64,000 nucleotides of DNA from Octopus bimaculoides. Lineage: Eukaryota. Where the stretch lies: assembly GCF_001194135.2 (NCBI RefSeq), contig NC_069000.1:42704176-42768175 (forward strand), read 5' to 3'. Below the pieces are notes generated by a model. That model had not been told where the DNA came from. It saw only the letters and a list, made by a program, of their open reading frames with translations, and did no database searches. The position numbers and the translations under genes are program-made. Position 1 is the first letter of the stretch. Each line of letters starts with the position of its first letter. Below are positions 56,370 through 56,581 of the stretch, piece after piece.

Positions 56370-56460
56370 CCGGAGTAAGCACATAAATGAGAAACAAGAT
56401 TGGAAAAAAGAGTACTCAAATACCAGAGGTAGAGTAATATGCTTTACAGAAAAGCAGCAG

Positions 56461-56503
56461 AAACTGTCTGACGAACGGGACGTGAAACTCTGAGTAACAG
56501 TTT
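56461..56503 (+). ncRNA. Minimal type I hammerhead ribozyme (canonical core), PLE/retrozyme type
   Basis: AAACTGT-CTGACGA-ACG GGA CGT-GAAA-CTC T GAG-TA-ACAGTTT. Stem I AAACTGT/ACAGTTT 7 bp, conserved CUGANGA and GAAA boxes, 3-bp stem II, near-palindromic stem III (ACTC-T-GAGT), GUA triplet with predicted cut after 56496. Confidence 0.88.
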
Positions 56504-56532
56504 TTGTGATACTTCAACTGCTTTTCATTATA

Positions 56533-56581
<49 letters not shown>

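What the first reader, a model, noticed from the sequence alone, without database searches (positions are those of the whole stretch)
56370..56533. Fully canonical hammerhead ribozyme in a 165-bp (TA)n-inserted element, bracketed by short inverted repeats
Seen: every conserved core nucleotide, a 7-9 bp stem I, 3-bp stem II, self-complementary stem III and GUA site. The ribozyme segment is enclosed by GAAAAGCAG (56449-56457) and CTGCTTTTC (56518-56526), and the element sits between microsatellite tracts. Established: this is the minimal type I HHR form of PLE pLTRs. Inference: the HHR segment is inverted relative to the left part of the element, as in PLE inverted truncations, and is the motif most likely to be active; plus-strand transcription would give a cut after 56496.
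Basis: partly seen in the sequence, partly recalled or inferred. Interest (0 to 1): 0.85.

Follow-up and report, generated by a model that had tools for sequence, protein, structure and literature searches.

The report
Solitary hammerhead ribozyme motif, family unknown

Summary
The sequence facts hold. At 56457-56507 (+) every conserved hammerhead core base is present (CUGACGA, GAAA, GUA), framed by a 10-bp helix I, a 3-bp helix II and a near-palindromic helix III. Cleavage would fall after 56496. A descriptor found no such motif in 300 shuffles of the window or elsewhere in it. My extrapolation from 455 Mb of simulated sequence gives about 2e-5 per window.

The 9-bp "inverted repeats" are the closing stem of helix I beyond an 11-nt bulge. 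They are not transposon ends.

"Fully canonical" is overstated:
- Pair 10.1-11.1 is A-U, not G-C.
- Helix II is 3 bp with a triloop.
- No Rfam hammerhead model scores it, even at E<=10 on 86 nt.
- The monomer fold is disfavoured (-8.7 against -12.4 kcal/mol); a double-hammerhead dimer is favoured.

Microsatellite flanks are the norm here (183 tracts, median island 77 bp). The two halves of the island show no similarity in either orientation.

I found no second copy, reverse transcriptase (RT), tandem partner or Pol III box, and no relative in any searchable collection. No eukaryotic genome collection was available, so family membership and covariation stay untested.

Verdict: a real but ordinary solo relic, probably weak or inactive.

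The parts
56370..56533 (.). 164-bp non-repetitive island (GC 38%) between two microsatellite tracts. Its limits are those of the island, not shown to be the limits of a mobile element.
   Evidence: unique in the window by blastn
56449..56457 (+). Closing stem of helix I, 5' arm (GAAAAGCAG)
   Evidence: chance of the exact partner about 7e-5
56458..56467 (+). Helix I, 5' strand (CAGAAACUGU)
   Evidence: I3
56468..56474 (+). Core box C3-U4-G5-A6-C7-G8-A9 (CUGACGA)
56475..56483 (+). Helix II hairpin ACG-GGA-CGU: 3 bp with a triloop; pair 10.1-11.1 is A-U
   Evidence: adds +0.1 kcal/mol
56484..56487 (+). Core G12-A13-A14-A15.1 (GAAA)
56487..56495 (+). Helix III near-palindrome ACUCUGAGU. As a monomer it forms 3 bp plus loop CUG. 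Between two copies it forms 8 bp around a U.U mismatch.
   Evidence: (duplex -9.9 kcal/mol)
56496..56496 (+). A17; predicted self-cleavage 3' of this base (GUA|A)
   Evidence: position rule from the hammerhead numbering (PMC4209133)
56497..56506 (+). Helix I, 3' strand (ACAGUUUUUG)
56507..56517 (+). 11-nt bulge on the 3' strand of helix I (UGAUACUUCAA); occupies the place of 'loop 1'
56518..56526 (+). Closing stem of helix I, 3' arm (CUGCUUUUC)
56330..56369 (.). Left flank: (CA)n(TA)n microsatellite
56534..56639 (.). Right flank: (TG)5(TA)n microsatellite, running into an assembly gap (N, 56640-57284)

Best explanation
This is a solitary copy of a type I hammerhead ribozyme. It was most likely left by a hammerhead-carrying retroelement of the Penelope-like element / non-LTR retrozyme kind. 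Which of the two it came from cannot be decided here.

If the + strand is transcribed, the RNA would first form a long helix I: 10 bp, an 11-nt bulge, then a 9-bp closing stem. The catalytic core then needs a marginal 3-bp helix II and a helix III that is unstable within one molecule. Between two copies, helix III becomes an 8-bp duplex. The motif is therefore built to cut as a double hammerhead, after A56496, like the newt and PLE hammerheads.

The assembled locus has one copy only, so little or no self-cleavage is expected in its present context. Shown: the motif, its statistics and the computed energetics. Inferred: the retroelement origin, the dimeric mode and the low activity.
For: - The core is complete and all three helices are present.
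- It is far beyond chance in the window.
- The closing stem is non-random and coaxial with helix I.
- Helix III is near-palindromic. The double-hammerhead scores -29.5 kcal/mol, against -17.4 for two monomeric HHR folds and -24.8 for two monomer minimum-energy folds. The cofold minimum has the same topology.
- Literature: metazoan genomes hold thousands to more than 100,000 type I HHRs in retrozymes and PLEs, most with a short palindromic helix III that acts in dimers (PMC4209133; PMC7229834; PMC6765202).
- Dispersed monomer copies of retrozymes are common, and retrozymes are related to PLE pLTRs (bioRxiv 10.64898/2026.07.22.740005).
- Looped extensions of helix I are known to matter in newt hammerheads (PMC6155905).
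- A possible GIY-YIG endonuclease remnant elsewhere in the window (13081-13719) hints that PLE-like elements live in this genome. This hint is weak.
Against: - No second copy of the 164-bp island or of the motif exists in the window.
- No relative turned up in any searchable collection. None of these is a eukaryotic genome collection, so this absence says little.
- There is no long RT-like ORF or pLTR partner in the window, no clear EN next to the locus, and no tandem array.
- No Rfam hammerhead model scores it.
- The architecture fits neither published consensus: A10.1-U11.1, 3-bp helix II, 10-bp helix I.
- Cleavage, transcription and covariation are all untested.
Confidence: 0.6

Rival explanations
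1. One reading: a 5'-truncated or inverted pLTR fragment of a Penelope-like element, carrying the PLE minimal hammerhead, placed in a (TA)n tract by the GIY-YIG endonuclease.
For: - PLE hammerheads lie near the 3' end, and PLE copies are heavily 5'-truncated. Some PLE clades prefer (TA)n (PMC8557442).
- The motif sits at the 3' end of the island, 7 nt from the microsatellite.
- Helix III is palindromic.
Against: - The PLE min-HHR features are not met: helix II 6-8 bp, helix I 4-5 bp, G10.1-C11.1.
- (TA)n preference is documented for Naiads, which lack canonical hammerheads.
- Microsatellite flanks are the norm in this window.
- The two halves share no similarity in inverse orientation.
- There is no RT or EN nearby and no second HHR.
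Confidence: 0.15
2. One unit of a tandem retrozyme array whose other units are hidden in the assembly gap 106 bp downstream (56640-57284), or were collapsed by the short-read assembly.
For: - Non-LTR retrozymes are tandem repeats of about 50-970 bp, each with a type I HHR.
- A dimer-dependent hammerhead makes most sense in tandem.
- A 645-N gap follows the locus.
Against: - The gap is entered and left through TA-rich microsatellite: (TA)n on the near side, an ATATAC-type repeat on the far side, as are many other gaps in the window.
- No partial second unit is visible on either side.
Confidence: 0.1
3. A functional, single-copy hammerhead that cuts a host transcript in cis as a monomer. It would be helped by a contact between the 11-nt helix I bulge (UUC, 56513-15) and loop II (GGA, 56478-80).
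For: - Helix I and its closing stem are perfect, which suggests youth or constraint.
- Looped helix I extensions permit monomeric cleavage in newt hammerheads.
- UUC/GGA complementarity exists.
Against: - The monomer HHR fold is 3.7 kcal/mol above the minimum-energy fold, with joint probability 4e-4.
- Helix III costs +1.9 kcal/mol.
- A10.1-U11.1 replaces the conserved G-C.
- The bulge lies 10 bp from the core, not about 6 bp as in the canonical type I motif.
- A 3-nt complementarity is expected by chance.
- No gene context was found.
Confidence: 0.08
4. A chance resemblance inside a hairpin, or a small palindromic DNA element, with no ribozyme ancestry.
For: - At whole-genome scale a few motifs of this quality are expected by chance: about 0.1-0.5 per Gb, extrapolated.
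- No Rfam hit and no family found.
Against: - The expectation is about 2e-5 for this window.
- Core boxes, three helices, cleavage triplet and closing stem are all in register.
- No TSD or transposon-like ends surround the 78-bp hairpin.
Confidence: 0.03

Closest known systems
Canonical metazoan type I hammerheads of non-LTR retrozymes and satellite DNAs (newt satellite 2, coral, mussel, axolotl; PMC7229834)
   Same: Type I topology, complete core, AT-rich host sequence (island GC 38%), a weak near-palindromic helix III that favours a double-hammerhead, and a looped extension of helix I. Dispersed monomer copies are known.
   Different: No tandem array is assembled. Helix I has 10 bp before the loop rather than about 6. 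Helix II is 3 bp with a triloop rather than about 4 bp with a conserved loop. Pair 10.1-11.1 is A-U. The Rfam models do not match.
Minimal hammerheads of Penelope-like element pLTRs (Cervera & de la Pena 2014, PMC4209133; Lunse et al. 2017, known to me only through the review PMC6765202)
   Same: Type I, a palindromic and very short helix III, predicted dimeric action, low expected monomer activity, and mostly scattered solo copies from truncated elements.
   Different: [quoted passage not shown] Here the proportions are reversed, and no RT-EN ORF or pLTR is at the locus.
SINE-like hammerhead retroposons of schistosomes (Sm-alpha / Sj-alpha)
   Same: A short non-coding element with a single type I hammerhead.
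   Different: Those carry a Pol III promoter upstream of the ribozyme and have loop-loop contacts. No A or B box (up to 2 mismatches) and no tRNA-like sequence was found here.

Membership tests
Hammerhead ribozyme (general) | Conserved core C3 U4 G5 A6 N7 G8 A9, G12 A13 A14, A15.1-U16.1, H17 | tested here: met
   CUGACGA 56468-74, GAAA 56484-87, U56495, A56496
Hammerhead ribozyme (general) | Three helices meeting at the core | tested here: met
   Helix I 10 bp (+9), helix II 3 bp, helix III 3 bp. Helices II and III are thermodynamically marginal (+0.1 and +1.9 kcal/mol).
Hammerhead ribozyme (general) | G10.1-C11.1 closing pair of helix II, highly conserved (PMC4209133) | tested here: not met
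   A56475-U56483. The alternative register gives C-G with unpaired bases on both sides.
Hammerhead ribozyme (general) | Match to a curated covariance model (Rfam hammerhead families such as RF00163) | tested here: not met
   No hammerhead family listed at gathering score, or at E<=10 on 301 nt and 86 nt
Hammerhead ribozyme (general) | Conservation of the core and covariation of the stems among homologues | tested here: inconclusive
   No homologue obtainable: window (4, 70), protein-space searches, metagenome, viral and prokaryote DNA scans (30, 39-41, 50-52). No eukaryotic genome collection was available.
Hammerhead ribozyme (general) | Site-specific self-cleavage | not testable with these tools
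   Needs in vitro transcription or RNA-end mapping
PLE pLTR minimal hammerhead | Lies in direct or inverted terminal repeats flanking an RT-(GIY-YIG EN) ORF, or in a recognisable fragment of one | tested here: not met
   No long RT-like ORF in the window and no second HHR. The only GIY-YIG-like ORF is 43 kb away (13081-13719). Homology to a PLE consensus could not be tested.
PLE pLTR minimal hammerhead | Long helix II (6-8 bp) and short helix I (4-5 bp) | tested here: not met
   Helix II 3 bp, helix I 10 bp plus a 9-bp closing stem (definition)
PLE pLTR minimal hammerhead | Unpaired base between A9 and 10.1 | tested here: inconclusive
   A56475 could be read as that base, but helix II then shrinks to 2 bp and U56483 is also left unpaired
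PLE pLTR minimal hammerhead | Absent or very short helix III with palindromic 15.2-16.2 / loop 3 | tested here: met
   ACUCUGAGU is self-complementary except for the central U
Non-LTR retrozyme | Tandem repeats of one short unit, each with a type I HHR | tested here: not met
   Single copy; TRF and blastn show no repeat of the unit. A gap at 56640-57284 leaves room for doubt.
Non-LTR retrozyme | Expressed as linear and circular monomer RNA | not testable with these tools
   No transcript data available
Schistosome-type SINE with hammerhead | Pol III A and B boxes upstream of the ribozyme | tested here: not met
   No match with up to 2 mismatches in 56250-56640, either strand; no tRNA-like gene

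The most novel reading that the evidence does not exclude
A previously undescribed compact type I hammerhead architecture: a 3-bp helix II with a GGA triloop, A10.1-U11.1, and a 10-bp helix I followed by an 11-nt bulge and a 9-bp closing stem. In this reading it is active as a monomer through a bulge-loop II contact (UUC 56513-15 with GGA 56478-80), and is kept as a single-copy, host-domesticated self-cleaving site rather than a transposon relic.
Probability: 0.05. Interest if true: 0.55.

Novelty: new member of a known kind. Interest (0 to 1): 0.2.

Why it matters
Hammerhead motifs are already known in huge numbers in animal genomes, where they mark Penelope-like elements and retrozymes. One more solo copy changes little.

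The value of this check is mostly corrective. A complete core plus good stems is real signal here, but three things did not hold up. The label "canonical PLE hammerhead" fails the published definition. The microsatellite "insertion site" is ordinary background for this genome. The "inverted repeats" are RNA structure.

The unusual proportions are a very short helix II and a long, looped helix I. If they proved to be shared by a family and active, they would add a variant that current descriptors and Rfam models miss.

Tried and rejected
- **Rfam.** Whole window at gathering score, then E<=10 on 301 nt and on 86 nt. No hammerhead family appeared, only microsatellite-driven miRNA noise and weak hairpin hits.
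- **Copies in the window.** blastn with word size 7, descriptor scans including the PLE minimal form and the U3-A8 core variant, and a scan allowing one core mismatch. Nothing beyond a 19-nt match at 58771-58789 (E about 0.1), judged chance.
- **Copies elsewhere through protein space.** I translated the two stop-free frames of the island and searched the 5.8-billion-protein set, hoping for spurious ORFs on eukaryotic contigs. No candidates.
- **DNA pattern scans** of metagenome, viral and prokaryote-genome collections. Either 0 hits or two 19-mer chance hits that do not extend.
- **The GIY-YIG-like ORF at 13081-13719** as a route to PLE copies with hammerheads. It gave two Logan homologues from one run (SRR11869390), with no HHR on their contigs. 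The run accession is not in the paper library.
- **Paper supplements** searched for the same ribozyme sequence: none held or no match. Lunse et al. 2017 is not held.
- **pre-miRNA reading of the 78-nt hairpin.** Rejected: a 29-nt "terminal loop", an 11-nt bulge, and Rfam E of 0.3-6 in a tiny search space.
- **MITE or TIR reading of the 9-bp arms.** Rejected: no TSD, a 78-bp span, and arms coaxial with helix I.
- **SINE reading.** Rejected: no A or B boxes and no tRNA.
- **Left half as an inverted or direct copy of the right half.** Rejected.

Full report
**What is there.**
All features below are on the + strand.
- Helix I: C56458-U56467 pairs with A56497-G56506. That is ten contiguous pairs, one of them G.U.
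- Core box CUGACGA: 56468-56474.
- Helix II: ACG-GGA-CGU, a 3-bp hairpin with a triloop (56475-56483).
- GAAA: 56484-56487.
- Helix III: the near-palindrome ACUCUGAGU (56487-56495).
- Cleavage triplet G-U-A ends at 56496, so a cut would fall between 56496 and 56497.
- GAAAAGCAG (56449-57) and CTGCUUUUC (56518-26) are exact complements.
- The 164-bp island lies between (CA)n(TA)n on the left and (TG)5(TA)n on the right. An assembly gap starts at 56640.

**Is it more than chance?**
- A descriptor requiring the core boxes plus helices of at least 5, 3 and 2 bp finds only this site on either strand of the window.
- Adding the PLE-style minimal form and the U3-A8 core variant finds nothing more. 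Allowing one core mismatch also finds nothing more.
- The descriptor scored 0 hits in 300 dinucleotide-preserving shuffles.
- In 455 Mb of first-order Markov sequence with the window's composition, 22 hits had helix I>=5, 5 had >=6 and none had >=7.
- Extrapolating to the observed 10/3/3 gives about 0.1-0.5 per Gb, or about 2e-5 per 64-kb window. This figure is my extrapolation.
- The exact complement of the 9 bases just 5' of helix I, found within 25 nt 3' of it, has a probability of about 7e-5.

The motif is real signal. At the scale of a multi-gigabase genome, however, a few such sites could still arise by chance.

**What the inverted repeat is.**
The two 9-nt arms are coaxial with helix I. 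The 5' strand runs without a break from 56449 to 56467. The 3' strand carries an 11-nt bulge (56507-56517) between the two paired blocks. RNAfold puts both blocks in the minimum-energy structure of the 78-nt segment (-21.2 kcal/mol, z -2.0). This is the "loop 1 plus closing stem I" layout of type I hammerheads (Fig. 1B legend in PMC4209133). It also matches the "internally looped extension of helix I" that matters in newt hammerheads (PMC6155905). It does not look like a pair of transposon termini, and no target-site duplication flanks it.

**How canonical is it?**
Less than claimed.
- The closing pair of helix II is A-U. G10.1-C11.1 is "highly conserved" in canonical and PLE hammerheads.
- Helix II is only 3 bp with a 3-nt loop.
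- The bulge in helix I lies 10 bp from the core. In the usual metazoan type I motif, helix I is 6 bp and helix II is 4 bp, and their loops touch.
- None of Rfam's hammerhead models reports the site, at gathering score or at E<=10 when only 301 nt or 86 nt are searched. PLE-type minimal hammerheads were themselves found with descriptors rather than with such models.

**Energetics (ViennaRNA; the catalytic-core tertiary structure is not modelled).**

| Fold of the 51-nt core | kcal/mol |
|---|---|
| Monomer, hammerhead fold | -8.7 |
| Monomer, minimum-energy fold | -12.4 |
| Helix I alone | -9.0 |
| Two copies, double hammerhead | -29.5 |
| Two copies, two monomer hammerhead folds | -17.4 |
| Two copies, two monomer minimum-energy folds | -24.8 |
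| Two copies, cofold minimum (same intermolecular topology) | -31.7 |

- The three hammerhead helices together have a joint probability of 4e-4 in the monomer.
- Relative to helix I alone, helix II adds +0.1 and helix III adds +1.9 kcal/mol.
- In the cofold minimum, a competing hairpin pairs core bases A6-C7-G8 with CGU 56481-83.
- The helix III palindrome alone gives a duplex of -9.9 kcal/mol.

The motif is therefore of the dimer-dependent kind, as described for newt and PLE hammerheads. The assembled locus offers no partner.

**Is it the PLE minimal hammerhead?**
The published form has helix II of 6-8 bp, helix I of 4-5 bp, an extra base after A9, G10.1-C11.1, and no or almost no helix III. 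Only the palindromic helix III is shared. The window holds no long RT-like ORF, and the 50-63 kb ORF listing showed nothing RT-like by eye. I did not screen for decayed RT remnants. There is no second hammerhead either.

One ORF at 13081-13719 (- strand) looks by eye like a Zn-knuckle plus GIY-YIG endonuclease. It has no Pfam hit itself. One of its two homologues reaches only a sub-threshold GIY-YIG score: 20.8 bits against a cut-off of 22.6. It lies 43 kb away and is not linked to the finding.

**Is it a (TA)n-targeted insertion?**
The window is saturated with microsatellites.
- 183 merged alternating purine/pyrimidine tracts cover 12.5% of the called bases.
- The median island between tracts is 77 bp.
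- 104 of 163 gap-free islands are 200 bp or shorter, and 22 islands are 78-200 bp long.

Being flanked by such tracts is what any short unique stretch here looks like. The "165-bp element" is simply the island, and its true limits are unknown. In the literature the (TA)n bias is reported for Naiad PLEs, which lack canonical hammerheads.

**Is the ribozyme half inverted relative to the left half?**
Local alignment of 56370-56448 against 56449-56533, forward or reverse-complemented, scores no better than 61-76% of shuffles. Without a family consensus, nothing supports an inversion.

**Search for relatives.**
No eukaryotic genome collection was available, so I tried indirect routes.
- blastn within the window.
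- The two open frames of the island against the 5.8-billion-protein set, which includes ORFs called on assemblies of public sequencing runs.
- Degenerate DNA patterns against metagenome, viral and prokaryote-genome collections.
- A 19-mer from the left half against metagenomes, which gave two non-extending chance hits.

All were empty. This says little about copy number in the source genome.

**Other readings.**
There are no Pol III A or B boxes and no tRNA-like sequence, which argues against a schistosome-type SINE. A pre-miRNA reading and a MITE reading of the hairpin were rejected on shape and for lack of a target-site duplication.

**Conclusion.**
The best reading (confidence about 0.6) is a solo relic or monomer derivative of a hammerhead-bearing retroelement of the PLE/retrozyme kind. 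It carries a dimer-type type I hammerhead that is probably weak or silent where it stands. Dispersed monomers of this sort are common.

The rivals are:
- a tandem array hidden in the gap (0.10);
- an active, domesticated monomeric ribozyme (0.08);
- chance (0.03).

It is a new member of a known kind and of low interest. That would change only if a genome-wide search shows that its unusual proportions define a family, or a bench assay shows monomeric activity.

Noticed in passing
window 13081-13719 (-): A 212-aa ORF whose middle resembles, by eye, a Cys-rich knuckle followed by a GIY-YIG nuclease core (VVYKC...FYIGSS...H...E). It has no Pfam hit itself. It has two homologues (55-61% identity), both from one public run (SRR11869390). 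One of them scores just below the Pfam GIY-YIG cut-off. It may be a remnant of a Penelope-like element endonuclease. No hammerhead lies next to it or on the homologues' contigs.
   Followed up: partly
window 18157-18456 (+): A 99-aa ORF with a sub-threshold match to the mariner-type transposase DDE domain (Pfam PF01359, E 0.0055, 17 bits against a cut-off of 24). Probably a decayed mariner/Tc1 fragment.
   Followed up: partly
whole window: Extreme microsatellite load: 183 alternating purine/pyrimidine tracts covering 12.5% of called bases, mostly (TA)n, (CA)n and (GA)n. There are also 19 runs of N (10-771 bp) and GC is 35%. This looks like a short-read draft of a repeat-rich animal genome. Many gaps sit inside microsatellites.
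   Followed up: partly
window 30069-30654: A minisatellite with a 22-bp unit (CTCACTAACAGATATCACAGCT), about 22-27 copies, 70-76% matches, with 44- and 66-bp higher-order periods.
   Followed up: no
window 41865-42106, 27473-27697, 20184-20316, 39886-40103; also 51135-51311, 49024-49200, 46885-46999, 5697-5860: At least two interspersed repeat families of about 100-250 bp, each with about four copies in the window (72-88% identity), on both strands. They look like SINE-like or other short retroposons. Neither overlaps the hammerhead island.
   Followed up: no
window 11795-12043 and 23153-23372; related copy 48513-48697: Two stretches that match their own reverse complement (about 250 bp and 220 bp, 70-78% identity). 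The first has a related copy at 48513-48697 (86% identity). They look like foldback or MITE-like elements.
   Followed up: no
window 56471-56483: The core triplet A6-C7-G8 (ACG) duplicates the 5' strand of helix II (ACG). The 3' strand CGU can therefore pair with either one. The predicted minimum of two cofolded copies uses the core triplet, which would give an inactive conformer.
   Followed up: yes
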